Positions 4,525-57,375 of a stretch of DNA of 64,000 bases are shown here, piece by piece. The DNA is taken from assembly GCA_024137785.1 (NCBI GenBank), contig JAHRHZ010000122.1, positions 3,311,227 to 3,375,226 on the forward strand. Reading direction: 5' to 3'. A model generated the notes under the pieces. That model did no database searches and was not told where the DNA came from. It saw only the letters and a list, made by a program, of their open reading frames with translations. This DNA is from Ginglymostoma cirratum. Taxonomy: Eukaryota. The translations under genes and the position numbers were made by a program. The stretch's first letter is position 1. The number at the start of each line of letters is the position of its first letter.

Positions 4525-5050
4525 GAGATAACAAGGTGTGGGCCCTGCAGCCCAATGGTATCAATGTGGATTTCACAAGCTTCAAAATCTCCCCTCCCCC
4601 AACCGCATCCCAAAACCAGCCCAGCTCATCTCCGCCTCCCTAACCTGTCCTTCCTCTCACCTATCCCCTCCTCCCACCTCAAGCCCCACCCCCATCTCCT
4701 ATCTACTAACCTCATTCCGCCCCCTTGACCTGTCCGTCCTCCCTGGACTGACCTATCTCCTCCCTACCCCCCCCACCTACACTCACCTTTACTGGCTCCA
4801 TCCCCGCCTCTTCGACTTGTCTGCCTCTTCTCCACCTATCCTCTCCTCTATCCATCCTCTATCCGCCTCCCCCTCTCTCCCTATTTATTTCAGAACCCTC
4901 TTCCCCTCCCCCATTTCTGATGAAGGGTCTAGGCCCGAAACGTCAAGCTTTCCTGCTCCTATGATGCTGCTTGGCCTGCTGTGTTCATCCAGCCCCACAC
5001 CTTGTTATCTCGGATTCTCCAGCATCTGCAGTACCTTTTAACTCTCATAT
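4525..5050 (+). mobile_element. 5'-truncated Penelope-like retroelement: GIY-YIG C-terminal remnant, pyrimidine-rich UTR and hammerhead-like pseudo-LTR, with a short inverted copy of the terminus at the left end
   Basis: From 4542 it translates ALQPNGINVDFTSFKI, resembling the end of PLE GIY-YIG endonucleases. 4525-4542 is the reverse complement of the element's own 3' part. TSD ccattaatttgaa(c/t)aat at 4508-4524 and 5051-5067. Confidence 0.75.
4914..4947 (+). ncRNA. Minimal type I hammerhead-ribozyme-like motif (family A)
   Basis: uuu-CUGAUGA-A-GGGU(CUAG)GCCC-GAAA-C-GUC-aag: conserved core boxes, 4-bp stem II, self-complementary ACGU helix III, GUC triplet, weak 3-bp stem I. Confidence 0.55.
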
Positions 5051-5354
5051 CCATTAATTTGAATAATCCCTTGTTTTGATTTTCTCTTTAAGGTTTCTCG
5101 AAGGGTTTTTAAAACTCTGAATTCTGTGAAGACTGCAGGCATATTTCTTGTTGATGGATGCAATTTTAAACGGGTCTTAGTGCTGCCGTTTCCCTTCTCG
5201 TGTCTTAAAGCTGGGGCTGGGGGGTTATCATGAACATTTGATTTCCCAAGATCCAAGTGTTAACATTGAGACGATTCCCCATGATCAGCTGGAGGTACTT
5301 TCCACAAGCTTTGTTTACATAAATATCGACGTGTCACCTAATGATATGAATGAA

Positions 5355-8020
5355 AGAACAAGAGAAGTCCTGCACAGGAACAGGCCCTTTGGCCTTCCAA
5401 GCCTGCGTCGATCGATCATCATGCCCTAACTAAACTGAAAAAACAAACCTCCTGCCTTTATTCAGTCTGTATCCCTCAATTCCCTCCCTATTCACGTAAC
5501 CATCCAGATGCCTCTTAAATGTTGCCAACATGCCTGCTTCTGGCAGTGCATTCCAGGCTCCTACCACTCTCTGTGTGTAAAACTTCCCTCGCACATCTTC
5601 CTCAGACTTCACCCCTCTCACCTTGAACCTGTGCCCCCTTGTAATTGAACTTCAACTCCGGGAAAAAGCCTCTGACTATCCACCCAATCTGCACCTCTCA
5701 TAATTTTGTAGATCTCTATCAGGTCTCCTCTCAGCTGCCATCTTTCCAGTGAAAACAATCCGAGTTTTTTCAACTTTGCTTCATTGCCAATGCCCCCGAG
5801 ACCAGGCAACATCCTAGTGAACCTTCTCAGCACTCTCTCCAAAGCGTCCACGTCCTTCTGGCAGTGGGGTGACCAAAACTGCATGCAGTACTCCAAATGC
5901 GGCTTAACAAGGGTTTTACATAGATGCAACATGTTTTGCCAACTCTTGTACTCCATGCCCTGGTCAATGAAGGCAAGCACGCCATATGCCTTCTTAATCG
6001 CCTTGGCCACCTGTGTTACCACTTTTAGGGAAATGTGGACCTGCACATCCAGATCCGTCGATATGTTCATGTTCCTAAGGGCTTCTGCCATTTACAGTAC
6101 GGTTCACACCCAAATTTGATCCTCCAAAATGCATCATCTCGCATTTGTCTGGATTAAACACCGTCTGCCATTTCTGTGCCCAAGTCGCCAATCTATCTAT
6201 ATCCTGTTGTATGCTCTTACGATCGTCGGCACTATCAGCAACTCCACCAGTCTTCGTGTCATCTGCAAAATTATTAATCAGACCACCCACATTTTCCTCC
6301 AGATCATTTACTTACACTATGATTAACAGAGGACCTAAGACTGATCCCTGTGGAACAGCACTAGTTATCGGCCTCCATTCTGAAAAACACCCTTCCACCG
6401 CTACCCTCTGTCTTCTGTGACCAAGCCAGCTTTGTGTCCATCTAGCCAGCCCACCCCGAATCCCATGTAATTTTACTTTTTGTACCAGTCTGCCATGTGG
6501 GACTTTATCAAATGCCTTACTAAAGTCCATATAAATTATATCCACAGCCCTTCCCTCATCAATTATCTTTGTCACCTCTTCAAAAATTTCAATCGTGTTG
6601 GTGAGCTACGACCTTCCCCATACAAAACCATGCTGCCTGTCACTAACTAGTCCATTTTCTTCCAAATGTGCATATACCTTGTCATTCAGTATCTTCTCCA
6701 AGAGCTTTACCACCACAGATGTCAGGCTCACCGGCCTATAATTTCCTGGATAATCCCTGCTTCCTTTCTTAAACGAGGAAACAATATTGGCTAAGCTGCA
6801 GTCCTCTGGAACCTCACTTGTGGTCAAAGAGGATGTGAAGATATCTGGTAATGCTCCAGCTACTTCTTCCCTTGCCTCTCGCAGCAACCTGGGACAGACC
6901 CGGGACTTCAGTTTTGTAGGGACATGCAAGTCCTGCAGTTTAATCAACTGGTCTTTAAAAGCCTCCCACATGCCAGATGTAGATTTGTCCTCAAATAACT
7001 GCTCCCAATCCACATTCCCCAGTTCCTGTCTAATTTGGATATAATTGGCCCTTGCCCAAGTAAGCATCCTCACCCGAGGGCCACTCTTGTCCTTGTCCAT
7101 GACTCTTGAAATCTTATGGAGTTATGGTCACTAAGCCCAAAATACTCTCCTAATGAAACACTGATCACCTGTCCTGGCTCATTCCCTAATACCAAGTCTA
7201 GTATGGACTCCTCTCTGGGTGGATTGGCAACATACTGTCTCAAAAGAGCCCTCCTGGACACATATAACAAATTTCTCTCCATCCGAGCCTCTGGGTCTAA
7301 GGGAGTCCCAGTCAATAAGAGGAAAGTCAAAGTCACCCACCACAACTACACTGCTTTACTTACAACTTTCCATTGTCCAACTACATATCTGCTCGTCTGT
7401 CTCGCATGGACTATTGGGAGGTCTATAGGAAATTCCCAACGTTGTGATTTCACTCTTCCTATTCCTGAGCTCCACCCATAATGCCTCACTGCAAGATCCC
7501 TCTGATGTGTCCTCCCTCAACCAAGCTTTGATGTGATCCCTACTCAGCAATGCAACTCCCTCAACCCTCTTGTTATCCATCTAAAACAGTGATATCCTGG
7601 AATGTTAAGCTGCCAGTCCTGCCGCTCCTTTAACCATGTCTCTGTAAGGGCAATAACTCATAATCCCATGCAGTAATCTATGCTTTTAGCACACCTGTCT
7701 TAATTTTATACTTGCATCGAAGTAATGCACTCCAGACCTCCAGTCCCTCTGAGCCCTGCAACTTCCCTCTGCCTGCTTTTACTCTGCACCATGCATACCT
7801 CAGTCTCTCTTTTGACCACAGTCCCTGCACTCACCGGCCTGTTGTTCCAGTTCCCAACCCCCTGCCACGCTAGTTTAAACCCTCCCGAAGAACTCTAGCA
7901 AATCTCTTGCCCAGGATATCAATGCCCCTCCAGCTCAGGCACAACCCGTCCTTCTTGTAGAGGTCCCACCTTCCCCAGAAGACATCCAACGATCCAAATA
8001 TCTAAAGCCCTCCCTCCTAC
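5355..8020 (-). mobile_element. CR1 LINE, internally deleted (endonuclease and RT remnants)
   Basis: Minus-strand ORFs with YRPPNS, ILDLVLGNEPG, SDHN, NYRPVSLTS, YMDFSKAFDKVPH, VPQGSVLGP, FADD; large deletion junction near 6900. Confidence 0.9.
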
Positions 8021-8271
8021 ACCAGCATCGGTCCAATTCAAACCTCCTGAAATAAAGACCGACATATAATTAGTCACTTAGATGTCCTTTTTTGTAAGAC
8101 CTGTCCACTGGTGTTGAGCGATGTGTACATGAGACCCAATAAATCCCTTTGCACATACATATATCTTAACATCTCATCTTTTAAGCAAAAAAACCCAATT
8201 CATTTCTTTCAAGGTGAATTACCTCACTTGCTCATAATGCACTATTTGTTCCTTTGTAACTTGTTTTACAG

Positions 8272-8388
8272 ACAATAAGGATTGCAGATGCTAGAAGCCA
8301 GAGTCTATAGGCGTGAGGTTGGAAGAGCACGGCAGGCCAGACAGCATCCGAGGGGCAGGAAAGTCCATGTTTCAGGCCAAAACCCTTT
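8272..8388 (-). mobile_element. Diverged single-arm Penelope-like terminus (family A-related)
   Basis: tgcagatgctagaa...gcaggcc...agcatc...gcaggaaag...tgtttcaggcc...cccttt aligns by eye to the family A arm. Confidence 0.55.
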
Positions 8389-8639
8389 GTAACTCACTGC
8401 TCTGTTTGCAAAGTTTACACTACCAGCTTTGCATCATTTGCAAACTTATGCAACTTCATTAGCTCATTGTTATATGCAGAACCATGAAAAGGCAAGGCCC
8501 CAGTACAGATCTCTAATGACATCTTTTTATCCTTGCACTATGTCTCCCACTCTCAAGTAATTACCACCTCCAATCACTTACTTACCTCCATTTTCAATTA
8601 TATTAATAATCTCTTAAATAGACCCTTATCAGACTTGTT

Positions 8640-11600
8640 TGAATGAGAGCAGAGCTAGTTGGAATTGACTGGGAAAGGAGTTCAGCAGCAAAGATAGTTG
8701 AGGCAAAATGGTAGATATTTAAGAAAATAATTAACACTTACAGCAAAGGTATATCCCAGTGCGAAAGAGGAATTCTAGCAAAAGGATAAGCTAACCATGG
8801 TTAACCAGGAAAGTGAAGGCTAGCTTCAAACTGAAAGACAGACCACAAAGAACACATACCATGTGGTAAAGATTAGTGGTAACTGGAGGATCGGGAAAAT
8901 GTTTAAAAAAGGAAACCAAAAACAAAATAAAGAGGGAAAAAAAGAAACTTTGAGGGTGACCTTTCAAGTAATATCAAGATGGACAGAAAAAGCTTCTTTA
9001 AATATCTAAAATGGAAGAAAGAGGCCAAAGTTAACATCGTCCCTTAGAGTATGAGGCTGTGGAAATAATAATGGGGGAGCAGGATACGGCAGAGGAGTTG
9101 AATAAATACTTAGCATAAGTCTTCACAGTGGAAGACACTAATAACTTTCCAAAACTACTAAATACTCAAGGGGCAAAAAGAGGACAGGAAATAAATACAA
9201 TGTCCATCACTAGAGAAAAAGTGTGATGGAAACTAATGGGGCTTAAGATCTATGCCCCACACCCCCTCCCCAGGCCTGATGGAATGCACCCTAGAATATT
9301 AAAGTTTGGAGCTACAGAGACTGTGGATACACTGGTAATCTTTCAGGAAATCTTAGTGTCTGGAAAAGTCCCAGAGCATTGGAAAACTGCCAATGCAATA
9401 CATTTATTTAAAAAGGGAAGGAGATAAAAATCAGGTAGCAATGGGCCAGTTAGCTTAGGATCTGTTATTGGTAAAAATGTTTGAGTCTACTAAAGAGAAT
9501 ATAACAGTACAGTATTGAGAAATACATAATATGGTCAAGCTGACTCAGCGTGGCCTCATGAAAGGAAGGTCAAGCTTGACAAATTTACTAGAGTTCTTTC
9601 GTGAGGTAACAAGTAGGATGGATAAAGGGGAAGCTGTGGATGGGATATATTGAATTTTCAGTAGGTGTTTGAGAAGGTACCACACGTTTGCATACTTAAT
9701 AAGAGCCTGTGGTGTTAGAAGCAGTCTAGTAGCATGGATACAGGAATGGCTAAGTAATAGAAGACAGACAGTTGGGAACCTGTAACTAGTGGAGTGCAGT
9801 GTCACAGGAATCAGCTTTAGGGCCAAAATTACTTAGAATATATATTAATGACAAGGACAAGGAAAATGAGCATACTTTCGCCAAGTTTGCAGATAACACA
9901 AAAATGTGGGAAGACAAGTGTTGAGGACGGCACAAAGAGTCCACAGAGGGATACAGACAGGTTAAGACACTGGGCAAAAACTCAGCAGATGGAATATGAT
10001 GTGGGAAAATGTGACGGTGTGGACTTTGGCGAGAGGAATGCAAGATCTGAATGATATTTAAGTAGAGAAAGACTATGTAGCTATAAGAAGTAGAGCTATA
10101 AGAAAGGGTAGATAGCTATAACACAGAGGGAGGTTCTTGTGCATAAATCTCAAAAAAACTAGCATATATATTTAGCTAGTAAAAGGAAGGCAAATGGAAT
10201 GTTAGCTTTGAATATAAAGTAATGGAGTATGAAAATAGGGAAGTCTTGCTAAAACTAAAGAAGGCCCAAAACTAAAATAGTGTGAACAATTTTGGACCCC
10301 TTATCGAAGGGAAGATATAATGGCATTGCAGGCAGTTCAAAGAGCAAGTGTGAAAATAGATAAGTCCCCTGGGCCGGATGGGATCTATCCTAGAATTCTC
10401 TGGGAAGCTAGGGAGGAGATTGCAGAGCCTTTGCCTTTGATCTTTTTGTCGTCATTGTCTACAGGAATAGTGCCAGAAGACTGCAGGATAGCAAATGTTG
10501 TCCCCTTGTTCAAGAAGGGGAGTAGAGACAACCCTGGCAATTATAGACCAGTGAGCCTTACTTCGGTTGTGGGTAAAGTGTTGGAAAGGATTATAAGAGA
10601 GAGGATTTATAATCATCTAGAAAGGAATAATTTGATTAGGGATAGTCAACACGGTTTTGTGAAGGGTAGATCGTGCCTCACAAACCTTATTGAGTTCTTT
10701 GAGAAGGTGACTAAACAGGTGGATGAGGATAAAGCGGTTGATGTGGTGTATATGGATTTCAGTAAAGTATTTGATAAGTTTCCCCATGGTAGGCTATTGC
10801 AGAAAATTCGGAGGCATGGGATTGAGGGTGATTTGGCGGTTTGGATCAGAAATTGGCTAGCTGTAAGAAGACAGAGGGTGGTGGTTGATGGGAAATTTTC
10901 ATCCTGGAGTTCAGTTACTAGTGGTGTACCGCAAGGATCTGTTTTGGGGCCACTGCTGTTTGTCATTTTTATAAATGACCTGGATGAGGACGTAGGAGGA
11001 TGGATTAGTGAATTTGCGGACGACACTAAAGTCGGTGGAGTTGTGGATAGTGCGGAAGGATGTTGCAGGTTACAGAGGGACATAGATAAGCTGCAGAGCC
11101 GGGCTGAGAGGTGGCAAATAGAGTTTAATGCGGAGAAGTGTGAGGTGATTCACTTTGGAAGGAGTAACAGGAATACAGAGTACTGGGCTAATGGTAAGAT
11201 TCTTGGTAGTGTGGACAAGCAGAGAATGTTGGTGTCCATGTGCATAGATCCCTGAAAGTTGCCACCCAGGTTGATAGGGTTGTTAAGAAGGTGTACGGTG
11301 TGTTAGGTTTTATTGGTAGAGGGATTGAGTTTCGGAGCCGTGAGGTCATGCTGCAGCTGTACAAAACTCTGGTGCGGCCGCACTTGGAGTATTGCGTACA
11401 GTTCTGGTCGCCACATTGTAGGAAGGATATGGAAGCATTGGAAAGGGTGCAGAGGAGATTTACCAGGATGTTGCCAGGTATGGAGGGAAGGTCTTGTGAG
11501 GAAAGGCTAAGGGACTTGAGGTTGTTTTCGTTAGAGAGAAGAAGGTTAAGAGGTGACTTAATAGAGACATACAAGATGATCAGAGGATTAGATAGCGTGG

Positions 11601-12370
11601 ACAGTGGGAACCTTTTTCCTCGAATGGTGATGGCTCGCATGAGGGGACATAGCTTTAAATTGAGGAGTGATAGATATAGGACAGATGTCAGAGGTAGATT
11701 CTTTACTCACAGAGTAGTAAGGGCGTGGAATGCCTTCCCTGCAGCAGTAGTAGACTCGCCAACTTTAAGGGCATTTCAATGGTCGTTGGATAAACATATG
11801 GATGATAATGGAATAGTGTAGGTTAGATGGGCTTCAGATTGTTACACCGCCCTGTGAAACCATCGGGGGCCGAAGGGCCTGTACTGTGCTGTAATATTCT
11901 ATGTTCTATGTTCATTCACTAGGCATGATTCTGGGTATGGAAGGCTCCTTATGAGAAGAGGTTGAATAGGTTGGGTCTGTACTTGTTTGAGTTTAGAAGA
12001 ATGACAGATGACCTTATTGAAACTTACAAGATTCTTAGAGGACTTGACAGGTTAGATGTGGCCAGGTTGTCTAGCCTTGTTGAACAATATAGGACCAGAG
12101 GGTCTAATCTTAGAATAAAGGGTTGCCTCTTAAAACAAAGGTTGAAGGGGAATTTCTTCTAGCAGTGAATGCATGTCAAGACTCGATCATTAAGTATACT
12201 CAAGGCTGAGACAGACACATTTTCATCAGTAAGGAAATCAAGAGCTCTGGAGAGAAGGCAGGAAAAAGGAGTTAAGCATTGTCAGATTAGCCACGATCCC
12301 ATTAAGTGGTGGAGTAGACTTGATGGGCTCAGTGACTTGCTTCTGCCCCCATCTTATGGTGTTCTGGTTT
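8640..12370 (+). mobile_element. Older decayed CR1 LINE (host of the nested copy)
   Basis: ORF2 remnants with stops and frameshifts (PDGMHPRILK, KVPEHWKTAN, LIETYKILRGLDR); continues on both sides of 10346-11913. Confidence 0.8.
10346..11913 (+). mobile_element. Young 5'-truncated CR1 LINE (ORF2 reverse transcriptase and 3' UTR) nested in an older CR1
   Basis: ORFs 10320..11255 and 11240..11821 give KSPGPDG, NYRPVSLTS, QHGF, YMDFSK, GVPQGSVLGP, FADD and YCVQFWSP; single frameshift near 11226; (ttctatg)n tail. Splits the host sequence gcagttcaaagag|ttcactagg. Confidence 0.92.
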
Positions 12371-12739: not shown

Positions 12740-15180
12740 TTCCTGGCATCTAACCTGCCCTTGTAGCCAATGTTTTTATGTGGCAAGTCCATTTGAGTTT
12801 CTGGACAACGGTAACCCCGAGGATGTTGATATTGCACAGTTCAGTAATGGTAACGCAACTGACTGTCAAGGGAAGATGGTTAGATTCACTCTTATTAGAA
12901 ATGGTCATTGCCTGGCATTTATTTGGTACAAATATTACTTCTCACTTCTCAGCCCAAACCTGGATATGGTCCAGATCTTGTTGCATTTGAACATGGAATG
13001 CTTCAGTACCTGAGGAATCGCAAATGGTGCTCAACATTCTGCAGACATTTCCACTCTTGACCTTATGATGGAGGGAAGGTCATTACTGATGCAGCTGAAG
13101 ATGTTTCAGCCTAGATTATTACCCTGAGGGATTTCTGCACAGATGTCCTGGAGCTTAGATGACTAACCTCCAAAACCACAATCGTCTTCCCGTGTGCCAG
13201 CTATCACTCCAACCACTGAGTGTTATCCCCAGTACCCATTGATTCCACTTTTTATAGGGCTCCTTGATGCCACACTCATTCAAACATGGCCTTGATATGA
13301 AGGGCTGTCACTCTCACCTCACCTGTGGAATTAAGCTCCTTTGTTTGAACTAATACTGTAGTGAGGTCAGGAACTGAGTGTCTCTGGGCCTGGCAAAACT
13401 CAAACCGGGTGTCACTGAGCAGCTTACTGCTGAGCAGCTTACTGCTGGGCAGGTGCTGTTTGATAGCACTGCTGATGACACCTTCCATCACTTTACTGAT
13501 GGTCGAGGATAGACTGATGGGATGGTAATTCATGGGTTTGGTTTTGTCTTGCTTTGTGTGTACAGGGCATTCCCAGTGTTGTAAACTCCGAGAAGATGTT
13601 GGCTCATTCTGGAGCACAGGTCTTCAAAACTATTACTGGAATTTTGTCAGGGCCCATAGCCTTTGAAATATCCTGTGCCTACGATTATTTCTTGATATCA
13701 CGCGGAATGAACCAAATTGGCTGAAGAATGGAATCTGTGATGCTCGGAACCCCTGCAGGAGTCCGAGATTGTTGTGAATGCTTCAGCCTTATCTTTCGCA
13801 CTGATGAGCTGGGCTCTTCCATCGTTGAGGTTGAGGATATTTGTGAAGCCTCCACCTCCAATGAGTTGTTTAATTATCCACCACCATTCACGACAGGATG
13901 TGGCAGGACTGCATGGCTTAGATCTGATTCATTGATTGTGGGATTGGTTAGCTCTGTCTGTCACTCGATGCTTATGCTGTTTGGCACACAAGTAGTCCCG
14001 TTGGTAGCTTCACTAGTTGATACCTTATTTTCAGAGACGTCTTGTGCTGCGCTGGTATACCCTTCTGCACTGTCCATTGAACCAGGGTTGATCCCCTAGC
14101 ATGATGGTAATGGTTGAATAGGGGATGTGCCATGCCTTGAGGTTGTAGATTATGTTAGAATACCACTCTGCTGCTATCAATGGCCTACTGTGCCTCATGG
14201 ATACTCAGTCTTGAGTTGCTAGATCTGTTCAAAGTCTGTTTGATTTAGCACGGTGATAGTGCCACACAACACGATGGATGGTATCCTCAGTTTGAAGGCA
14301 GAACTTTGTCTCCACAAAAACTGTGTGGTGGTGACTCTTACTGATACAGTCATGGACTGATACATCTGCAGCAGGCAGATTGGTGAAGATGAGATGAAGT
14401 ATGATTTTCCCTCTTGTCGGTTCCTTCAACACTTGCTGCAGACTCATTTTAGCAGCTATGTCCTTTAGAACGTGACCAGCTCGATCGGTAGCATTTTTGC
14501 CGAGCCACTCTTAGTGGTGGACATTGAAATCCCCCACCCGGAGTTCATTTTATGCCTTTGCCACCCGCAACGCTTTTTCCACGTATTGTTCAATTTGGGG
14601 GAGTACTGATTCATCAGCTGAGGGAGGAAGGTATGTGGTAATCAGCGGGAGCCTTCCTTGCCCATATCTAACCTGAAGCCATGAGACTTCACAGGGTCCG
14701 AAGTCAATGTTGAGGATGCCCAGGGCAACTTCCTCTGGACTGTGCTGCCACCTTTGCTGGGTCTGTCATGAGGATGGGAGAGGACATATCCAGGGATGGT
14801 GATGGTGGTGTCTGGGACATTGTCTGTCAGGTATGATTCTGTGGGTACGACTATGTCAGGCAGTTGCTTAACTAGTTTGTGAGACAGCTCTCCCAATTTT
14901 GGCACTAACCCCAAGATTTGATCAAGGAGAGCTTTGCAGGTTTGATAGGGCTGTTTCTGCTGTTGTCTTTTCCGGTGCCTAGGTCGATACCAGGTGGTCT
15001 GTCCGGTTTCATTTCTTTGTGGAGATTTTTTGTGAGTGATACAACGGAGTGGCTTGCTATGCCATTTCAGAGGGCAGTTGAGAGTCAACCACACTGCAGT
15101 CGGTCTGGAGTAACATGTACCAGGCGAGATTGGCAGATTTCCTTCCCTGGTGGACATTAGTAAGCCAATAGTTTCTGCCT
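12740..15180 (-). mobile_element. Second LINE family (CR1/Jockey group, Zenon-like), decayed, with endonuclease and RT remnants
   Basis: Minus ORFs: PDIVVPTESYL...IPGYVLSH..DRPSKGG (AP endonuclease), EPTRGKIILHLIFTN, NYHPISLSSTISKVMEGVI...VRVTALHIKAMFE (RT). Related 3'-end fragments at about 15320-15930, 28880-29420, 59355-59520 and 60640-60790; its 5' part recurs at about 18570-18720. Confidence 0.8.
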
Positions 15181-16238: not shown

Positions 16239-16294
16239 TCATAAATCAAAGATCAAAGCTCCCCTGATTCTTTTGGCAAGCGATAATTAATTAA
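16239..16294. promoter_or_regulatory. Candidate Wnt-responsive enhancer motif cluster (tandem TCF/LEF sites, PBX-HOX-like site, homeodomain palindrome)
   Basis: ATCAAAG-ATCAAAG at 16245-16258, TGATTTATGA on minus at 16239-16248, TAATTAATTAA at 16284-16294; a further CCTTTGATC at 17030-17038. Confidence 0.4.
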
Positions 16295-17779: not shown

Positions 17780-18548
17780 GAAATTTGCATCACAGGTGGA
17801 CAGAATGGTAAAGAAGGCGTTTGGCACACTTGCCTTCATTGCTCAGACCTTTGAATATAGGAGGGAGGATTAGGCCCGAAACGTCAGCTTTCCTGCTCCT
17901 ATGATGCTGCTTGGCCTGCTGTGTTCATCCAGCTCTACACCTTGTTATCTTTGAGTATAGGAGTTTGGGATGTTATCTTGAGGTTGTACAGGACATTGGT
18001 GAGGCCTGTTCTGGAGTACTGTGTCCAGTTCTGGTCACCCTGTTGTAGGAAGGATATTGCTAGCCGGAGAGGGTTCAGAAAAGATTTACCAGGATGTTGC
18101 CAGGAATAGAGGGTTTAAGTGACAAAAAAAAGGCTGGGACATTTTTCACTGGAGCGTGGGACGTTGGGGCGAGACCTTATAGAGGTTTATAAGATCATGA
18201 GGGGCATTGGTAAGAACAAAAGCAAGGGTTGTTTCCCTAGGGTGGGAGAGTCAAAACCAGGGGTCATACTCGATGAGAGGAGAAAGTTCTAAAAAGGATG
18301 CAACTTTTAAAAAGGGGCAACTTTTTTCACCCAGGGAATGGTTTGTGTGCGGAATGAACTATCAGGGGAAGTGGTGGGTCCAGGTCCTGTTATAATTCTT
18401 AAAAGATATTTGGGTAAGTACATGGCTCCGAAAGGTTTGGAAGGATACAGGTCAAATGCAGGCAAGTGGGACTAATTTAGTTTGGGAACATGGGCAGCAT
18501 AGACTAGTTGGGTCCAAGGGTGTGTTTGCATGCTGTACGACTCTATGA
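17780..18548 (+). mobile_element. CR1 LINE 3' fragment, interrupted by a Penelope-like insertion
   Basis: [21 protein letters not shown]; CR1-type 3' UTR. Confidence 0.85.
17864..17950 (+). mobile_element. Short Penelope-like terminus (family A) inserted in a CR1 fragment
   Basis: Near-identical to 4930-5010; TSD ttga(a/g)tataggag at 17851-17863 and 17951-17963. Confidence 0.75.
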
Positions 18549-20972: not shown

Positions 20973-21136
20973 AAAGTCAGAAGTCACACGACATCAGGTT
21001 CCAGTCCAACAGGTTTATTTGAAATCACAAGTTTTCTGAGCGCTGCTCATTCGTCAGGTGACTTCACCTGACTATAACCTGGTGTCGAGTGACTTCTGAC
21101 CTTGTCCGCCCCAGTTCAACACCGGCACCTTCACAT
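20973..21136. mobile_element. Self-inverted Penelope-like terminal repeat, family C
   Basis: Arms gtcagaagtcac...caggtt / aacctg...gtgacttctgac; TSD ga(c/t)gcttgttc at 20962-20972 and 21137-21147; related copy at about 52575-52698. Confidence 0.65.
21021..21065 (-). ncRNA. Type I hammerhead-ribozyme-like motif (family C)
   Basis: Minus strand GAAGUCAC-CUGACGA-A-UGAGC(AGC)GCUCA-GAAA-ACUU-GUGAUUUC: 8-bp stem I (one G-U), 5-bp stem II, intact core boxes. Helix III (AACU) is not self-complementary in this copy. Confidence 0.6.
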
Positions 21137-24726: not shown

Positions 24727-25175
24727 TGGCACAGCATAGGTTAGCAACGAAGCTCCCTCGACATTGTCCCATCAAATGTTCATAGCTTAGGTATGGCATA
24801 TGGTTAGATACAGAGCAAAGCTCCCTCTGTTCTTTTAATCTGAAAGCATTTTCCACTCTTTAAATTGAAAGAAAAACTTCTTGACATTGTATTTAACATA
24901 ACAAGCATGGGGCTGGATGAACACAGCAGGTCAAGCAGCATCATAGGAGCAGGAAAACTTGACGTTTCGGGCCTAAACCCTTCATCAGAAATGGGCAAAG
25001 TTTTCCTGCTCCTATGATGCTGCTTGACCTGCTGTGTTCATCCAGCCCCATGCTTGTTATCTCGGATTCTCCAGCATCTGCAGTACCTTTTATCTCTGAC
25101 ATTGTATTTACCCCTGCACTGCTGTTGTCCTAGAGTGTTTGATGGGGACAGAGTAAAGCTTCCTGTATCCGCATC
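24727..25175. repeat. Inverted array of ~65-bp units, split by the Penelope-like insertion
   Basis: ggttag...aagctccctc at 24740 and 24803; tgtcccatcaaa at about 24767 is mirrored by tttgatggggaca at about 25138-25150. Confidence 0.5.
24896..25096. mobile_element. Self-inverted Penelope-like terminal repeat (family A, young subfamily)
   Basis: Two arms are exact reverse complements over about 60 nt; hammerhead core on minus at 24961-24988; perfect 14-bp TSD tgacattgtattta at 24882-24895 and 25097-25110. Confidence 0.8.
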
Positions 25176-32296: not shown

Positions 32297-32300
<4 letters not shown>

Positions 32301-34691: not shown

Positions 34692-34837
34692 GTATCAGAG
34701 ATAATAGGAACTGCAGATGCTGGAGAATCCAAGATAACAAGGTGTAGAGCTGGATGAACACAGCAGGGCAAGCTCTCCTGCTGCTATGATGCTGCTTGGC
34801 CTGCTGTGTTCATCCAGCTCTACACCTTGTTATCTAG
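34692..34837. mobile_element. Self-inverted Penelope-like terminal repeat (family A; ribozyme core lost at the junction)
   Basis: Inverted arms agataacaaggtgtagagctggatgaacacagcagg / cctgctgtgttcatccagctctacaccttgttatct; 13-bp TSD gctggttatcttt at 34679-34691 and 34838-34850. Confidence 0.8.
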
Positions 34838-35574
34838 GCTGGTTATCTTTCCTACTTAACCTTTTGTCATGACAGTGATGATTAATTTCAGTCCTTTAGA
34901 ATTAGCAGAGGCTTAGATCAATGAACAGGAGAAGGGTGGGCTGATTTCCATACAACCTATGTTCAGCAATGTTTAACCACCAACCAACAGAAATGCTTCT
35001 CGACGAGTACACGAAAATAATACTCGCAGCTTGCTTTACTTCTTTACCATGTTAAGTTTTCAGATAGTTTTTTTTCAGACGATTTAAGCAAAAATATATC
35101 ATTCGGTTAGATTTGTCATCATCTTGTGTTCAGGCTTGGCATGACAGAATTACATGATTGGCTGATAAACTGCCATTATTGTCACTTTTCCATCAATATT
35201 CTTATGAACAAAGGTGACATCAAAATAAAACTTTTTAAAACTTCTAAAATTTGTAACTCAACATCAGGCAATACATCAGTGCAGAATTTTCTCATGAGAG
35301 ATTAAATGCTGTTTCCTGTATACTGGACCAGTTTCCACGTGAAAGGAAGTGCACTGATTGGCCAATTAGCTCTGTTTATTTGTATCATTAAAGGCACTTT
35401 TATAGAAAGTCTTTTAAATGGCATTCCAGGAGCTCTAGTTAAATCTCATTTCTGACACTAACAGAACATTTGAGCCTTCCCCCTGCATTAACTGGCTCCG
35501 CTTTTGAAATTAATAATACCAAACGTAATTTGACCACTGCTCCGACAAAACACTTGTTCTACATTCTACAAAAA

Positions 35575-43461: not shown

Positions 43462-43636
43462 GAGATAATAGGAACTGCAGATGCTGGAGAATCTGAGATA
43501 ACAAGGTGTAGAGCTGGATGAACACAGCAGGCCAAGCAGCATCATAGGAGCAGGAAGGCTGACGTTTTGGGCCGAGACCCTTCATCAGAATTTCTGATGA
43601 AGGGTCTAGGCCTGAAACGTCAGCCTTTCTGCTCCT
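43462..43636. mobile_element. Self-inverted Penelope-like terminal repeat (family A), between the DKK4 and POLB 3' ends
   Basis: Central palindrome cccttcatcagaatttctgatgaaggg (43578-43604); 14-bp TSD aatttagcagttta at 43448-43461 and 43637-43650. Confidence 0.8.
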
Positions 43637-46001: not shown

Positions 46002-46656
46002 GAGATAAAAGGTACTGCAGATGCTGGAGAATCCGAGATAACAAGCATGGGGCTGGATGAACACAGCAGGTCAAGCAGCATCATAGGAGCAGGAAAACTT
46101 GACGTTTCGGGCCTAAACCCTTCATCAGAAATTTCTGATGAAGGGNNNNNNNNNNNNNNNNNNNNNNNNNNNNNNNNNNNNNNNNNNNNNNNNNNNNNNN
46201 NNNNNNNNNNNNNNNNNNNNNNNNNNNNNNNNNNNNNNNNNNNNNNNNNNNNNNNNNNNNNNNNNNNNNNNNNNNNNNNNNNNNNNNNNNNNNNNNNNNN
46301 NNNNNNNNNNNNNNNNNNNNNNNNNNNNNNNNNNNNNNNNNNNNNNNNNNNNNNNNNNNNNNNNNNNNNNNNNNNNNNNNNNNNNNNNNNNNNNNNNNNN
46401 NNNNNNNNNNNNNNNNNNNNNNNNNNNNNNNNNNNNNNNNNNNNNNNNNNNNNNNNNNNNNNNNNNNNNNNNNNNNNNNNNNNNNNNNNNNNNNNNNNNN
46501 NNNNNNNNNNNNNNNNNNNNNNNNNNNNNNNNNNNNNNNNNNNNNCCCTTCATCAGAAATTTCTGATGAAGGGTTTAGGCCCGAAACGTCAAGTTTTCCT
46601 GCTCCTATGATGCTGCTTGACCTGCTGTGTTCATCCAGCCCCATGCTTGTTATCTC
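46002..46656. mobile_element. Self-inverted Penelope-like terminal repeat (family A, young subfamily) spanning the assembly gap
   Basis: Arms are exact reverse complements (the two 187-aa ORFs on opposite strands are identical); TSD acactcttcatcaaga at 45988-46003 and 46657-46672. Confidence 0.8.
46146..46545. other. Assembly gap (400 N)
   Basis: Run of N; both flanks carry the same 28-nt palindrome. Confidence 0.99.
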
Positions 46657-46983: not shown

Positions 46984-47183
46984 AGAAAAAAAACAGAATT
47001 GCTGGAGAAGATCAGTGGGTTTGGCAGCAGCTGAGGAGAGATGTAACATTTGAAAAAGTGTCATACTGGACTCGAAATGTTAACTGTTTGTTTCCACAAA
47101 TGCTGCCAGATCTGCTAAGTTTCTCCAGCAATTTATGATTTCAATTCAGTCCTCCAGCAGCTGCATGATTTTGCCTTTTTTTT
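46984..47183. mobile_element. Older self-inverted Penelope-like terminal repeat, family B-related
   Basis: Arms aattgctggagaa...tggcagca / tgctgcca...ttctccagcaatt with a decayed core (gtgtc-atactg-gactc-gaaa-tgtt). Confidence 0.6.
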
Positions 47184-51187: not shown

Positions 51188-51375
51188 AAAAACAAAGTTG
51201 CTGGAAAATCCCAACAGGTCTGGCAGCATCTGTGAAGGTAAAAACAGAGGAAGGGTCACCGGACCCGAAACGTTAACTCTGTTTTTTCCTTCACAGATGC
51301 TGCCAGACCTGCTAGGCTTTTCCAGCGACTTTGTTTTTGTTCCTGATTTACAGCATCCGCAGTTCTTTCGGTTTT
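51188..51375. mobile_element. Self-inverted Penelope-like terminal repeat, family B
   Basis: Arms caggtctggcagcatctgtgaagg / ccttcacagatgctgccagacctg; partial core GAGGAA-GGGUC(ACCG)GACCC-GAAA-CGUU; TSD taaataaaact(a/g)catc at 51172-51187 and 51376-51391. Confidence 0.75.
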
Positions 51376-52574
51376 TAAATAAAACTGCATCATCGTCTGG
51401 ATACAGCTCAGCATGCATCTGCAGTACAAGAGTTCCATACCTCTTTGCGATTCTACCTCCAATCTTTGGCACAAATCTCTGACATTTTTCACACAAAAGG
51501 TAATTATTCACAGTTTGACTATGGAGACTTTCAAATTTTTGGCAGTTGTTGGAGCACATCTGCATCCAAAAAGCAATCAAATCTGGAAGCAAAGATATGT
51601 ATACGTGCTGAATTGTGAAAAGGACCAAAAAAGAGAAGTCCATTTATTCTTACAATACTTGCAGATCCTTGCTGGTAGCATCGGTGGTTTCCCAAAGTTA
51701 GGATATTGTACACCTGTTGTAAATTGGTAGAAAATTATTTCACCTGCCTGTGATGCCAGCATAACTACTAATCAGGATGAATGAGCCTTCACAATTATCA
51801 TCTACAATTTCTAGTTTCTCTGTCTCACCAAATTTAAGAAAGCTCAAAATCTACTCCAAAGTTTCCTATAGCCCAGTCACAGTCAACTGGTTTATTAATG
51901 TCAGCGAGATGTTATTTTTGTTACAAATAGATACTCAGATAGTTTTTGCTTTTTTTTAAAATGCCAACTTAAAAGTAAAAACCTGAAATAAACTCCTAAT
52001 CTCGCTTGCATGTTTCTTGTGCTCTTCTCTTCTCTCGGTATCATTGTGATTATGTCTGTGTTGCTGAAACACAGCTTATGCCAAGGGTTCACTACAACAT
52101 TGCAGGCCCCGAGTCTAAACTCAGCCAGGTCAGGGTGTGCCTGTCACCACTAACACCCTCACCATCGAGCCAACTGAAATCCGATAGAAGTCTAATGTCA
52201 AGGTTCTGGATAGGCTTAAGCTTTATAGTGGCTGTGAACCACTATCTTCCTCAATTTTCTCTTCAAAGAACAGTTCTTCGATGCCGCACATTTTTCCGAA
52301 AACCTCACAAGTGAGGTTGAAGACAGATTTCAAAACCCGTCATCAGTGCAACATTGGAAGCTCGACTCTAACTTGACACTGGAAAAGTGGTTGACAAGGA
52401 ATTGATTTATATATGAGGATAAATTTTAGAAATTTCAGCATGATCTTGACTCTTTGTAATTACGTAAAAACTTGAAATATGGCACCAATATGACCACTAT
52501 AAAACTGGTAATTTCTTACTCCTCATTTCAGAATGTTTACACCATTATCAAAAACATAACACAGTACAAAATTC

Positions 52575-52698
52575 ATGCGGATGTGCCAGACTAGGGTGGA
52601 CAAAGTCAGAAGTGTCATGATGCTAGGTTATAGTCCAACAGGTTTATCTGAAATCATAACCTGTTGGGCTATAACCTGGTGTCATGTGACTTCTGACC
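52575..52698. mobile_element. Self-inverted Penelope-like terminal repeat, family C (core deleted)
   Basis: Shares aaagtcagaagt...ggttatagtccaacaggtttat.tgaaatca and ctataacctggtgtc...tgacttctgacc with 20973-21136. Confidence 0.6.
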
Positions 52699-54217: not shown

Positions 54218-54352
54218 TAAAAAGCAAAGTATTGCAGGTGCTGGAGATCTTAAGTTAAATCAGAAAGTGGCAGACAAACTCAGCAGGTCTGGCAGCATCT
54301 GTGGAGGGAAGAACAGAGTCAACGTTTTGAGTCCAATAGAATTCTTCTTCAG
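54218..54352 (-). mobile_element. Single-arm Penelope-like terminus, family B-related
   Basis: Similar to 51188-51375; minus strand starts tCTGAAGAAG...ggactcaaaacgttgac. A further decayed copy lies at about 63165-63265. Confidence 0.6.
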
Positions 54353-55007: not shown

Positions 55008-55340
55008 CGGTCGCACAGTGGTTAGCACTGCTGCCTCATGGTACCAGGAACCCAGGAACAATTCCAGCCTTATGTGGAGTGTGCATGTTCTTCCCTTGTT
55101 TGTGAGAGTTTGAGCTGTGTGTTCCAGTTTCCTCCCACAGTCCAAAGATCTGCAGGTTAGGTGGATTGGCCATGCTAAATTACCCCATCGTGTCCAGGGA
55201 TGAGCAGGTTAGGTGGATTAACTGCGGTAATGTGGGAATTACGGGGATAGGGTGGGGATGGGATGCTCTTCAGAGGGTCAGTGCAGGTCCTATAGGCTGA
55301 ATGGCCTTTAACTGCACTGTAGGGGTTCTGTGATTCTACA
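55008..55340 (+). mobile_element. tRNA-derived SINE (HE1/V-SINE type)
   Basis: Clear similarity to 32754-33054; a 3' fragment of the same family lies at about 16640-16760. Confidence 0.85.
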
Positions 55341-57013
55341 CATCCACTAATTCTAAGAGCTACTGCCATGAGAATGCCACTATACACACACAAGTAAATA
55401 GTACAATTGGATATTGCCACCATCAATCTTATTTTGTGTCCCACTGCAATTGTGGCTCACTTGTTATGAAACGGGGCAGAGGGTGACACCAGGAGTTGTT
55501 TAAGATCTCTAAAGATAGTAAAGTACTGCAAAGACTTTAGCTGTTATGGTTCTATAATGACTGAAAATCACAAACTCCAGGCATTTCCACAAATTGCTCT
55601 TCAAAGAGAAATTTTATGTTGTACACAGGTTGAAGAAAGAGTCAATAACCTGTAATCAATTCAAAAATTCAGTTCTGACATTAGAGGAGTAATGAGCTAG
55701 AAGTTGAATTTTTCTTGCCACATGTACGAAGATACATTTTTGAACCGCTAACATGGGCTTGACTGCCTGCAATTTGACGATGATTTGCATAATTCACCAG
55801 TGACACCCACTATAAATTCTGACCAACTACAAAACAGATAATTTCTCACCATCCAGTGTGCCAAAGTAAAGCAATCATAGACTCTTAAGATACAAACTTC
55901 TTTTACACCAAAATGAAAAACACAACAAACCACAGAAAGACAAGTTTATTGAGTTCAAGATTTACTTGAACAAAGAAACATTGAAGATCCTGTCTTTTTC
56001 AGTCACTTGAACTCAACTTACTTTCATATACTGCTTAACAGAAAAGTCACACCTACAGCTGCAAAACAGAACATTTAGCCCACTTGGTAATGCCAGCATT
56101 TGCATAGCATGCAAGCCTCTTCCCACTTCCTTTTAATCTAACTTTATCAGTATTTACTTCTATTCCTTTCCCTGAATTCATTGTTGGATTTAGAGACTAT
56201 TTTTTAAAACCAATCTGATATCATGGCACACATGCGAGGCAGATGGGACTTGTACCTGGGCCTCCTGGCTTAGCGATAGGAAAACTAACACTGCACCACA
56301 AGAACTCTCCTGTATTGGATTTTATATTTTTCAACCAATGTGACATGCTTGGAGCAGGTGGGATTTGGACAGAGGCATTCTCAGCTTTTTCTCAACAAAA
56401 GGGACAGTGGCAGTGTGGAAGTTAAATTTACCAAGGGACAAAAGCAGGATGTAGCAATGAGCAGTTATTTATCAGACTGGGATAAAGTACATTGGCCACG
56501 AACAGGACTAAGTTATATTACTCCAGTTTGTGATTAATTATCTTCACAAAAAGAGTTCTCAAGAAGAAATACACCATTTGACTGAATCTCAGTTTCTAAA
56601 GCTCCAAGTCTTTTTGACAGAAAAAGAAATGTGGAGTTCCACTATGTTTCTTTGCCATGCTTCCAACAACAAAGTAAAGCCTAGTGCATGCATTTGGATC
56701 TACACTGATTAACTTTTTCTTCAGATACACAAGTCTCAATCCTCTGAAGGGGAAAAAAAAAATTGAAGTTGTAAATATTCCATCAGGGTGACAATGTTCA
56801 ACTTAAACATTTATTTAGTAAAATTCTTCCATTCTGAAGTATTTCTGAAACGTAATCAACTGGTATTAGAATTTTAGTGATTTAATTCCAAACTAGATGC
56901 ATACTTTTCATTTAACCTAGTTAATAAAGAAGGAATCTTCATCTATTTGGTTGATTTAGTAAACAGGCAAACTCTGCGAAAACATTAAGTTTCCAATATC
57001 ATTCAGTTCTTAC

Positions 57014-57153
57014 CTGTGCTTCCCAAAGGGCGAATTGTGTACTCATTCAATGTAAAGCCTTTTTCTAGTGCTTGGGTCCTCATGTTCTTGTTAAAAAGAT
57101 CACTGCCAGTGAAATAAAGCACACCGCAGAAATACTGATCTTTTGGAATTAGC
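57014..57153 (-). CDS. POLB: DNA polymerase beta, penultimate exon: [46 protein letters not shown]
   Basis: 140 nt, ttgcag| acceptor and G|gtaag donor; X-family YFTGS motif and N279/R283 equivalents. Within ORF 57003..57206. Confidence 0.96.
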
Positions 57154-57223
57154 CTGCAACAGGAGAAATGCATGGTCAGCAATGAGATTCCAAAGTGAAT
57201 AGCCACAAGTTAAAACAATTCTG

Positions 57224-57375
57224 ACTCAGAGATAGTAGGATGCTGGAGTCTGGGATAACAAGGTGTGGCGCTGGATGAACACAGAAAAGAAGGGTCCAGA
57301 CCCGAAACGTCAGCTTTCCTGCTCCCCTGATGCTGCCTAGCCTGCTGTGCTCATCCAGCTCCACACCTTGTTATC
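57224..57375. mobile_element. Self-inverted Penelope-like terminal repeat (family A), 70 nt from a POLB splice acceptor
   Basis: Arms gataacaaggtgtggcgctggatga / tcatccagctccacaccttgttatc; TSD ttaaaacaat(t/a)ctg at 57210-57223 and 57376-57389. Confidence 0.75.

What the first reader, a model, noticed from the sequence alone, without database searches (positions are those of the whole stretch)
4525..57375. A dense population of short hairpin retro-insertions with hammerhead-ribozyme-like cores, from three Penelope-like families
Seen in sequence: about 12 insertions of 90-530 nt, most made of two head-to-head copies of one terminus. Nine have 11-17 bp target-site duplications. Three families have different sequences but share the layout CUGANGA-A-[stem II]-GAAA-[4-nt helix III]-UH. 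Stem II is GGGU(CUAG)GCCC in family A, GGGUC(ACCG)GACCC in family B (whose best copy lacks the leading CU) and UGAGC(AGC)GCUCA in family C, so sequence differs while pairing is kept. Established knowledge: Penelope-like elements carry minimal type I hammerheads in their pseudo-LTRs, thought to act as dimers, and often insert with an inverted terminal copy. Inference: most copies here are only the ribozyme-bearing terminus folded back on itself, so they may be a non-autonomous, retrozyme- or MITE-like class of hairpin RNAs mobilised by a PLE reverse transcriptase. The alternative is extreme 5' truncation. The PLE-hammerhead link itself is known; I do not know whether this short palindromic form has been described in sharks.
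Basis: partly seen in the sequence, partly recalled or inferred. Interest (0 to 1): 0.8.

Follow-up and report, generated by a model that had tools for sequence, protein, structure and literature searches.

The report
Penelope retrotransposon fold-back end-pieces with hammerheads
The short hairpin-shaped repeats are real, but they are dead-end by-products of how Penelope-like retrotransposons integrate in this shark genome; they carry the already known minimal hammerhead ribozyme motif and are not a new class of self-propagating hairpin elements.

Summary
I found 14 short insertions (86-526 nt) from three families: 8 A, 4 B and 2 C. Ten are head-to-head arm pairs, and 11 have 9-17 bp AT-rich target-site duplications. 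A related species has an empty site for the largest copy. Five family-A arms keep an intact minimal hammerhead. Family C keeps one near-intact copy and family B none.

The favoured reading, an independent hairpin or retrozyme-like mobile class, is not supported. Every hairpin in the window has a different junction. Two copies that are 100% identical in sequence have different junctions. Genome-wide, many junction types occur, each at only about 1-10 loci, against roughly 10^5-10^6 arms.

In 9 of 10 hairpins, one arm reaches the element's end and the other stops 30-40 nt short. This is the Penelope "tail" signature. It matches published in-vitro work in which a Penelope protein nicks and extends both DNA strands from two internal start sites. 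So the hairpins are made at integration.

The PLE assignment rests on these structural hallmarks. No PLE ORF (RT plus GIY-YIG) was recovered.

This scan reached the same verdict in other windows of this genome. One open lead remains: arm 5' ends cluster at the hammerhead's 5' edge and just after its predicted cut site.

The parts
4525..5050 (+). Family A copy A1, 526 nt. An 18-nt inverted stub (4525-4542, the reverse complement of 4994-5011) is joined to a 5'-truncated body (4543-5050) that carries the 39-nt tail (5012-5050). The 17-bp duplication lies at 4508-4524 and 5051-5067.
   Evidence: An empty site in a related species joins 4507 directly to 5051 (X3 record 9).
4917..4944 (+). Intact minimal type I hammerhead motif of family A: CUGAUGA-A-GGGU(CUAG)GCCC-GAAA-CG-UC. 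The predicted cut lies between 4944 and 4945.
   Evidence: No Rfam match.
8262..8385 (-). Family A copy A2. An old, simple 5'-truncated copy that starts inside the hammerhead and has the tail. 9-bp duplication.
17864..17949 (+). Family A copy A3. A simple copy that starts in the stem II loop and ends at the tail-less 3' end (ref 5010). 14-15-bp duplication.
24898..25096 (.). Family A hairpin A4. The inverted tail-less arm covers ref 4910-5008 and holds an intact hammerhead at 24965-24988 on the minus strand. The direct arm covers ref 4945-5044, carries the tail and starts at the predicted cut site. Arms are 63/63 identical. 14-16-bp duplication.
34692..34835 (.). Family A hairpin A5 with no hammerhead. 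The inverted arm with tail covers ref 4969-5049. The direct tail-less arm covers ref 4944-5013. The two are joined over a 5-nt overlap (caagc). 13-14-bp duplication.
   Evidence: The sub-threshold mir-607 hits are caused by this hairpin.
43462..43636 (.). Family A hairpin A6. The inverted arm with tail covers ref 4915-5044 and its hammerhead has G12 mutated. The direct arm covers ref 4913-4960, which is an irregular outer end, and carries a motif at 43594 with a G-U closing pair. 14-bp duplication.
46004..46656 (.). Family A hairpin A7, split by the assembly gap at 46146-46545. The left arm with tail covers ref 4913-5040 and the right tail-less arm covers ref 4913-5011. Intact hammerheads lie at 46105-46128 (minus) and 46563-46586 (plus). 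Arms are 111/111 complementary. 16-bp duplication.
57224..57375 (.). Family A hairpin A8. The inverted arm with a partly deleted tail covers ref 4979-5026. The direct tail-less arm covers ref 4922-5009 and starts inside the hammerhead core. 10-14-bp duplication.
46997..47170 (.). Family B hairpin B1. Old, with arms 73% alike and a tail on the right arm only. No clear duplication.
51189..51375 (.). Family B hairpin B2. The tail-less inverted arm starts 3 nt after the predicted cut. The direct arm starts inside the core (it lacks the CU) and carries a 38-nt tail (51338-51375). 16-17-bp duplication.
54218..54345 (-). Family B simple copy B3 with a decayed hammerhead region.
63183..63250 (-). Family B fragment B4, old and 74% alike.
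20973..21136 (.). Family C hairpin C1. The tail-less inverted arm holds a hammerhead-like motif on the minus strand (about 21030-21057) with an 8-bp helix I. The right arm carries a 33-nt tail (21104-21136). 10-11-bp duplication.
52569..52697 (.). Family C hairpin C2 with no hammerhead. The left arm has a 36-nt tail (52569-52604) and starts 1-2 nt after the predicted cut. The right arm is tail-less. 9-bp duplication with one mismatch.

Best explanation
These are non-propagating integration products of Penelope-like retrotransposons (PLEs) from three lineages. Families A and B are visibly related in their 3' part; family C is distinct.

Reverse transcription starts at one of two internal sites about 30-40 nt apart, only about 65-105 nt downstream of the hammerhead. 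Most cDNAs stop within about 100 nt. Most copies are therefore just the ribozyme-bearing end-piece.

The fold-back form arises at integration:
1. The GIY-YIG nuclease nicks both target strands 9-17 bp apart.
2. Each nick primes a cDNA, one from the outer start site (giving the arm with a tail) and one from the inner start site (giving the tail-less arm).
3. The two same-sense cDNAs are joined head to head in the middle, by short overlaps or a few filler nucleotides.

The hammerhead is inherited from the parent's terminal repeat and has no role in the dead copies. A transcript of a hairpin copy folds into a long duplex instead of a ribozyme.

What is shown here: the insertions, the duplications, the empty site, the two discrete 3' ends, the one-tail-per-hairpin pattern, the variable junctions, and the absence of any amplified junction.

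What is shown in the literature for another PLE: nicking and extension of both strands from two start sites.

What is inferred: that the same mechanism made these copies, and how the two cDNAs are joined.
For: 1. Retro-insertion. Duplications of 9-17 bp vary in length within a family and are AT-rich. A contig from a related species joins 4507 to 5051, lacking the insert and one duplication copy.

2. Tail signature. In 9 of 10 hairpins from all three families, one arm reaches the element end and the other stops 30-40 nt short. Six tail-less family-A arms end within ref 5008-5013. If each arm took either end at random, 9 of 9 one-tailed hairpins has P of about 0.002 (my calculation).

3. Genome-wide ends. 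Ends followed by heterogeneous flank pile up at 5009-5014 and at 5045-5049. Depth halves over the tail bin.

4. Published match. A 30-40-bp tail at one end, and an adjacent inverted 5'-truncated copy, are described PLE hallmarks (PMC8557442). The anole PLE protein cleaves and extends both strands in vitro, starts at two adjacent internal sites that define the tail, and prefers AT-rich targets (PMC11167929).

5. Junctions made per event. The inner ends of all family-A arms differ. Copies at 24898 and 46004 are 100% identical over 100 nt but differ in junction. One search lists at least 11 different strand-switch joints. Each has depth 6-127 in organism B DNA contigs, where a single copy is about 12. 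Summed depth over the arms is 1-14 million.

6. Longer parents exist. Reads run on upstream of 4543 with 0.94 agreement.

7. Fold. The hairpin RNA of 24898-25096 folds at -137.9 kcal/mol, z = -19.6, as one 63-bp stem.
Against: - No PLE reverse transcriptase or GIY-YIG ORF lies in the window. I could not fetch a full-length parent, so the PLE assignment rests on structural hallmarks and the hammerhead motif.
- The two-strand priming model comes from one anole element in vitro. That paper saw no strand preference between the two start sites, so the strict one-tail-per-hairpin pattern is not directly explained by it.
- One hairpin (43462-43636) has an irregular outer end at ref 4960.
- Two loci share nearly the same symmetric junction (ref 4913/4913-4915). 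That is a hot spot, which an amplified master would also produce.
- Only the best-supported joints were displayed; 281 were not shown.
Confidence: 0.78

Rival explanations
1. One priming event plus snap-back. A single target-primed cDNA folds back on itself (or switches template onto itself) and copies its own 5' part. The distal arm is then trimmed when it is joined to the other target end, for example by the element's nuclease at the tail boundary.
For: - The two arms of a locus always carry the same subfamily variants and are 100% identical in the youngest copies.
- Several recurrent joints pair ref 4913-4914 with 4949-4950. These are the two strands of hammerhead helix I, as expected if the cDNA 3' end anneals there.
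- The 34692 junction shows a 5-nt overlap.
Against: - Perfectly symmetric junctions with no loop (46004; joints 4913/4913 and 4914/4914) cannot form by intramolecular snap-back.
- At 24898 and 34692, the arm joined second contains sequence that the first arm lacks, so a second template molecule is needed.
- Simple, non-hairpin copies also end at the inner site (17864-17949). That site therefore behaves as a start site and not a trimming site.
- Extension of both strands is directly shown in vitro.
Confidence: 0.15
2. The hairpin is itself a non-autonomous element (retrozyme- or MITE-like) that is transcribed and re-inserted by a PLE enzyme.
For: - Two loci from different subfamilies share an almost identical central junction (43590 and 46131-46132).
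- Symmetric 4913/4914 joints recur at several loci.
- The 43462 copy's short distal arm could be a 5' truncation of a hairpin template.
Against: - No junction type exceeds about 10 loci, against roughly 10^5-10^6 arms.
- Junctions differ between identical-sequence copies.
- Distal arms end at the inner start site and not at random truncation points.
- A hairpin RNA would be a near-perfect duplex and a poor template.
- There are no tandem direct repeats as in metazoan retrozymes (bioRxiv 10.64898/2026.07.22.740005).
- No pile of RNA ends suggests processing or circles (section 6).
Confidence: 0.04
3. A discrete short RNA of about 100-135 nt, running from the 5' edge of the hammerhead (or from its cut site) to the two 3' ends, is the usual template. 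Many 'truncated' arms would then be full-length copies of a small hammerhead-defined RNA.
For: - Four family-A arms start at ref 4913-4915.
- Most listed joints have one side at 4913/4914. Ends at 4914 abut heterogeneous flank in 56 contigs. Depth halves across 4913 and again across about 4945.
- Four arms in three families start 1-3 nt after the predicted cut.
Against: - About half of the arms that cover the hammerhead continue upstream (depth 1.0 against 1.8 million).
- The arm at 24898 runs 3 nt past 4913 into parent sequence.
- No RNA ends pile up at either place in poly(A) reads (section 6).
- In vitro, hammerhead mutants did not change the product size, and no RNA-seq ends were seen at the cut site.
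Confidence: 0.12
4. DNA transposon of the MITE or foldback type, with terminal inverted repeats.
For: Inverted arms flanked by direct repeats.
Against: - Duplication length varies from 9 to 17 bp within one family.
- Arms are unequal, and one end always carries an extra 30-40 nt.
- The central junction differs at each locus.
- Single-arm copies with the same ends exist.
Confidence: 0.01

Closest known systems
Penelope-like elements of the Penelope/Poseidon type, e.g. PAc of Anolis carolinensis (Frangieh et al. 2024, PMC11167929) and the general PLE insertion anatomy (Craig et al. 2021, PMC8557442)
   Same: - Heavy 5' truncation.
- An inverted 5'-truncated copy next to the direct one.
- A 30-40-bp tail at one end only.
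- AT-rich targets.
- A hammerhead a short distance upstream of the reverse-transcription start sites. In PAc the cut lies about 85-92 nt before the starts; here it is 67 and about 101-105 nt.
   Different: - Here the copies are almost all tiny (86-526 nt in this window) and extremely numerous.
- No coding parent was seen.
- The host is a shark.
- The rule of exactly one tail per hairpin, and the clustering of inner ends at the hammerhead edges, are not stated in the papers I could read.
Minimal dimeric type I hammerheads of metazoan PLEs (Cervera and de la Pena 2014, PMC4209133; Lunse et al. 2017, cited in PMC6765202 but not readable here)
   Same: - Conserved core.
- An unpaired nucleotide between A9 and 10.1.
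- A G10.1-C11.1 pair.
- No closed helix III, with a palindromic 15.2-16.2 instead (ACGU).
- A short helix I.
   Different: - Stem II here is only 4-5 bp, against 6-8 bp reported for Schistosoma and Drosophila.
- Helix I of family A is only 3-4 bp.
- Activity is untested.
- Family C departs at 10.1/11.1 (U-A).
Metazoan non-LTR retrozymes (Cervera and de la Pena 2020; Li et al. 2026 preprint 10.64898/2026.07.22.740005)
   Same: Non-coding, hammerhead-bearing sequences derived from the PLE terminal repeat and presumably dependent on PLE enzymes.
   Different: Retrozymes are head-to-tail tandem repeats that give circular RNAs. These are dispersed single or head-to-head copies, with no tandem direct arrays in the window and no sign of processed RNA ends.
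Twin priming inversions of human L1
   Same: Both target strands prime cDNA synthesis, which gives an inverted segment joined by microhomology inside one set of target-site duplications.
   Different: In L1 the two segments are different, adjacent parts of one RNA. Here both arms cover the same part of the element, and they start at two defined internal sites.

Membership tests
Penelope-like element (insertion product) | Parent encodes a PLE-clade reverse transcriptase with a GIY-YIG endonuclease | tested here: inconclusive
   No such ORF lies in the window. ORFs of at least 110 aa give only RVT_1 fragments, which I read as LINE-type. Reads show the parent continues upstream of 4543, but its coding part could not be fetched. 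The metagenome scans found no shark DNA.
Penelope-like element (insertion product) | [quoted passage not shown] | tested here: met
   Tails of 30-40 nt sit on exactly one arm in 9 of 10 hairpins in families A, B and C. Two discrete 3' ends are seen genome-wide.
Penelope-like element (insertion product) | An inverted 5'-truncated copy adjoining the direct copy, with heavy 5' truncation | tested here: met
   10 of 14 loci. The depth profile falls about 5.7-fold over the last 80 nt before the hammerhead's 5' edge.
Penelope-like element (insertion product) | Hammerhead motif in the terminal repeat, close upstream of the insertion's 3' end | tested here: met
   The motif lies 67 nt and about 101-105 nt upstream of the two 3' ends in family A.
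Penelope-like element (insertion product) | AT-rich target with staggered cuts (duplications of variable length) | tested here: met
   Duplications are 9-17 bp and 72% A+T, against 59% for the window.
Minimal dimeric type I hammerhead (PLE min-HHR) | Conserved core CUGANGA ... GAAA ... UH | tested here: met
   Five family-A arms and one family-C arm. Other arms are truncated or mutated; for example, G12 is changed to A at 43561-43590.
Minimal dimeric type I hammerhead (PLE min-HHR) | Unpaired nucleotide between A9 and 10.1, and a G10.1-C11.1 pair | tested here: met
   Bulged A in all hits. G-C in families A and B. Family C has U-A, and 43594 has G-U.
Minimal dimeric type I hammerhead (PLE min-HHR) | Palindromic 15.2-16.2, allowing an intermolecular helix III | tested here: met
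   CG (ACGU) in families A and B. The single family C copy has AC, which does not meet the criterion.
Minimal dimeric type I hammerhead (PLE min-HHR) | Helix I of about 4-5 bp | tested here: inconclusive
   Read from the sequence: family A has 3 bp (AUUU/AAGC type) or 4 bp in the AAGU subfamily. Family C has 8 bp. The thermodynamic fold prefers a competing UGAUG/CGUCA helix.
Minimal dimeric type I hammerhead (PLE min-HHR) | Self-cleavage after H17 (as a dimer, or protein-assisted) | not testable with these tools
   No pile of RNA ends at 4944/4945 in poly(A) raw reads (section 6). This is weak evidence either way.
Rfam hammerhead families | Score at or above the gathering threshold of a hammerhead covariance model | tested here: not met
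   No hammerhead hit, even at E up to 10. I expect this because those models need a closed helix III (my reading).
Metazoan non-LTR retrozyme | Head-to-tail tandem repeats of the hammerhead unit that give circular RNA | tested here: not met
   No direct tandem arrays in the window. Only rare 'goes back' joints and no RNA end piles.
MITE / foldback DNA transposon | Symmetric terminal inverted repeats and a duplication of fixed length | tested here: not met
   Unequal arms, a one-sided tail and 9-17-bp duplications.

The most novel reading that the evidence does not exclude
The hammerhead leaves a footprint in the genome. Reverse transcription starts only 67-105 nt downstream of the cut site. 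Self-cleaved (or ribozyme-folded, protein-bound) template RNA would then force run-off or a stop there. That would explain both why the insertions are so short and why arm starts cluster 1-3 nt after the predicted cut and at the 5' edge of helix I. The cut-site cluster is 4 of about 24 arms in three families, with about 0.8 expected. The helix I cluster lies at ref 4913-4915, and junction partners lie at 4946-4950. If true, this would be in-vivo evidence that PLE hammerheads act during retrotransposition. The only in-vitro study did not see that.
Probability: 0.15. Interest if true: 0.6.

Novelty: new member of a known kind. Interest (0 to 1): 0.27.

Why it matters
The main value is for annotation. 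These end-pieces number in the hundreds of thousands in this shark genome. They create perfect palindromes that break assemblies, as the gap at 46146-46545 shows. They can also be mistaken for microRNA precursors or for a new class of mobile hairpins.

A secondary value is mechanistic. The genomic copies give natural, in-vivo support in three shark lineages for the two-start-site, both-strand priming seen in vitro for an anole Penelope element. They also add the observation that each fold-back uses each start site once. If the clustering of arm starts at the hammerhead holds genome-wide, it would bear on what PLE hammerheads are for, which is still an open question.

Tried and rejected
- **Rfam scans** at gathering threshold and at E up to 10 gave no hammerhead. 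The only notable hits, to mir-607 on both strands at 34729-34838, reflect the long A5 hairpin and are far below threshold.
- **Search for a PLE coding parent in the window.** I found only RVT_1 fragments, which I read as LINE-type.
- **Search for more copies or parents in public metagenome contigs.** A parent-specific 28-mer found nothing. A 19-mer from the most abundant part found five contigs that lack any surrounding similarity, so they are chance hits.
- **Monomer and dimer folding** of the hammerhead regions. The minimum-energy folds are a competing core helix and a stem II duplex, not the hammerhead. This neither supports nor refutes activity.
- **Two papers were not held:** Lunse et al. 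2017 and Pyatkov et al. 2004.
- **MITE reading** rejected because the duplication length varies.
- **Retrozyme reading** rejected because there are no tandem direct repeats.
- **Assembly artefact reading of the 46004-46656 palindrome** rejected. Its flanks are distinct and share a 16-bp duplication, and the arms have the usual unequal ends.

Full report
**What is there.** Taking copies from the window itself as blastn queries and reading each place, I find 14 short insertions in three sequence families.
- Family A: 4525-5050, 8262-8385 (minus), 17864-17949, 24898-25096, 34692-34835, 43462-43636, 46004-46656 and 57224-57375.
- Family B: 46997-47170, 51189-51375, 54218-54345 (minus) and 63183-63250 (minus).
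- Family C: 20973-21136 and 52569-52697.

Ten of the 14 consist of two inverted arms. Eleven are flanked by direct repeats of 9-17 bp. These repeats are 72% A+T, against 59% for the window. Families A and B share a recognisable 3' part. Family C is different in sequence.

**Proof of insertion.** I laid contigs and reads of public runs on 4400-5200. One run of organism A matches the unique flank without a difference, so the window comes from that species. A DNA contig of a related organism B, about 4% different in the flanks, runs from window 4507 straight to 5051. It lacks the 526-nt insert and one copy of the 17-bp repeat. This is an orthologous empty site.

**The hammerhead motif.** A descriptor for the minimal hammerhead gives 8 hits, against 0.115 expected in shuffles. 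Five are family-A arms with CUGAUGA, a bulged A, stem II GGGU/GCCC, GAAA, the palindromic CG and then UC. One is the family C copy. It has an 8-bp helix I and a 5-bp stem II, but a U-A pair at 10.1/11.1 and a non-palindromic AC at 15.2/16.2. Family B has no intact copy here.

These features are the ones published for PLE minimal hammerheads, which are thought to act as dimers and cleave poorly in vitro (PMC4209133; review PMC6765202).

A second abundant subfamily is seen as read overhangs. It keeps the core while changing N7 and one stem II pair (U-G to U-A). Comparing family C with A and B gives three stem II pairs changed on both sides (read). That fits a conserved structure in the parents.

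Rfam finds nothing. I attribute that to its models needing a closed helix III. Energy-based folding does not predict the ribozyme fold. Activity is untested.

**Why the hairpin is not a propagating unit.** In reference coordinates of the 4525 copy, the arm inner ends are 4543, 4910, 4913 (three arms), 4915, 4922, 4923, 4930, 4944, 4945, 4969, 4979 and 4994. No two hairpins in the window have the same pair of ends. The copies at 24898 and 46004 are 100% identical over 100 nt. Yet one has an asymmetric junction (4910 joined to 4945) and the other a symmetric one (4913/4913).

Genome-wide, one search lists at least eleven different strand-switch joints, with 281 further joints of all kinds not shown. 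In organism B's DNA contigs each has a summed depth of 6-127, where single-copy depth is about 12. That is one to about ten loci each. The summed depth over the arms is 1-14 million, which means roughly 10^5-10^6 arms. The window density of about 24 arms in 64 kb agrees with that order of magnitude. No junction has been amplified.

**The diagnostic anatomy.** In nine of ten hairpins, and in all three families, one arm reaches the element's extreme 3' end. The other stops 30-40 nt earlier.

Measured tails:

| Copy | A1 | A4 | A5 | A7 | A8 | B1 | B2 | C1 | C2 |
|---|---|---|---|---|---|---|---|---|---|
| Tail length (nt) | 39 | 36 | 40 | 31 | 30 | 37 | 38 | 33 | 36 |

Six tail-less family-A arms end within ref 5008-5013. 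Single-arm copies use either end: 8262-8385 has the tail and 17864-17949 does not.

Genome-wide, ends followed by heterogeneous flank pile up at 5009-5014 and at 5045-5049. Depth over the tail bin is half or less of the bin before it.

If the two arms drew their ends independently, nine one-tailed hairpins out of nine would have a probability of about 0.002 (my calculation).

**Comparison with the literature.** Craig et al. 2021 describe the following for PLEs in general: heavy 5' truncation, an inverted 5'-truncated copy next to the direct one, assembly problems caused by these structures, and a 30-40-bp tail often present at only one end.

Frangieh et al. 2024 purified the anole PLE protein. 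They showed that it cleaves and extends both target strands, prefers AT-rich sites, and starts reverse transcription at two adjacent internal sites. The sequence between those sites is the tail. In that element the hammerhead cut lies a short distance upstream of the start sites, the same geometry as here (67 nt and about 101-105 nt).

The shark fold-backs are what that mechanism predicts when both primed cDNAs are short and are joined head to head. The joining step is inferred. In the window I see a 5-nt overlap (34692 copy), a 2-nt palindromic overlap (46004 copy) and one or two filler nucleotides (24898 copy).

**The copies themselves are inert.** The RNA of 24898-25096 would fold into a 63-bp perfect stem (-137.9 kcal/mol, z = -19.6). 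Poly(A) RNA reads cover the element in proportion to its genomic abundance and equally in both read directions. There is no place where molecules begin or end in excess, including the predicted cut at 4944/4945. This looks like passive read-through transcription. The library may be unstranded, so I cannot name a strand.

**The assembly gap.** The 400 N at 46146-46545 lie at the centre of the 46004-46656 palindrome. The 28 nt before the gap and the 28 nt after it are the same self-complementary string. The arms are 111/111 complementary. A perfect 16-bp duplication brackets the insertion. Both sides thus belong to one insertion, and the contig ends may simply overlap.

**An open lead.** Arm starts are not evenly spread. 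Four family-A arms start at 4913-4915, the 5' edge of helix I. Most of the displayed joints have one side at 4913/4914, often with the partner at 4946-4950, which is the other strand of helix I. Contig ends at 4914 abut heterogeneous flank.

Four arms in three families start one to three nucleotides after the predicted cut: 24998, 34769, 51249 (minus) and 52657 (minus). About 0.8 would be expected if starts were uniform. This is a post-hoc count.

Because reverse transcription begins so close to the cut site, self-cleaved template would give exactly such very short cDNAs. Against this, the in-vitro study found that hammerhead mutants do not change product size and saw no RNA-seq ends at the cut site. 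I see no RNA ends there either. I rate this at about 15%.

**Verdict.** The PLE origin and the hammerhead motif are supported by structural hallmarks, but no PLE ORF was recovered. The idea of a new, self-propagating hairpin class is not supported. The structures are a known by-product of PLE integration, here in a shark and at very high copy number. Earlier follow-ups of this scan on other windows of the same genome reached the same conclusion. I tested it independently here.

Noticed in passing
window 1837-2190 (+), 5618-7100 (-), 10320-11821 (+), 13276-13617 (-): Fragments of reverse-transcriptase ORFs. Pfam RVT_1 scores E = 1e-34 for 10320-11255. By their motifs they look like LINE-type elements, not PLE. 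They are unrelated to the short hairpin insertions.
   Followed up: partly
window 34729-34838, both strands: Rfam mir-607 matches at 52-54 bits (gathering threshold 94). They are caused by the long A5 fold-back and are not evidence of a microRNA. Such PLE palindromes could mislead miRNA predictors.
   Followed up: partly
window 4918/4939 (joint): A strand-switch joint is seen in 514 poly(A) RNA reads starting at 115 places, but in no DNA contig of X1 or X3. It may be one highly expressed fold-back locus, or a library artefact at the near-palindromic stem II.
   Followed up: no
window 4946-5000 (run X24): About 540 reads of one RNA library share well-defined, non-repeat flanks on both sides of a diverged family-A-like fragment (agreement 0.95-0.98). 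They look like a single expressed or amplified locus that carries a decayed hammerhead (CUGCAGA core).
   Followed up: no
window 4590-4912: A long C/T-rich, low-complexity tract lies upstream of the hammerhead in the 526-nt copy. It creates a spurious 167-aa ORF (4538-5041) with no Pfam match. Arm starts pile up exactly where this tract begins (4913).
   Followed up: partly
window 4918-4922 with 4941-4945: Energy folding predicts a 5-bp helix UGAUG/CGUCA that pairs the hammerhead core with the cleavage-site strand in family A. This is a possible inactive alternative fold.
   Followed up: no
window 1954-1984 and 47031-47055: Two further matches to the relaxed hammerhead descriptor lack the palindromic 15.2-16.2 and a proper U16.1-H17. 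I take them for chance matches.
   Followed up: partly
window 21021-21065: A separate first-stage note places the family C hammerhead antisense in an intron of a DKK4-like gene. I did not check the gene assignment.
   Followed up: no
window 24898-25096 and 46004-46656: These two fold-backs belong to one subfamily. They are identical to each other over 100 nt and have 100% identical arms. This suggests very recent activity of that lineage in this species.
   Followed up: partly
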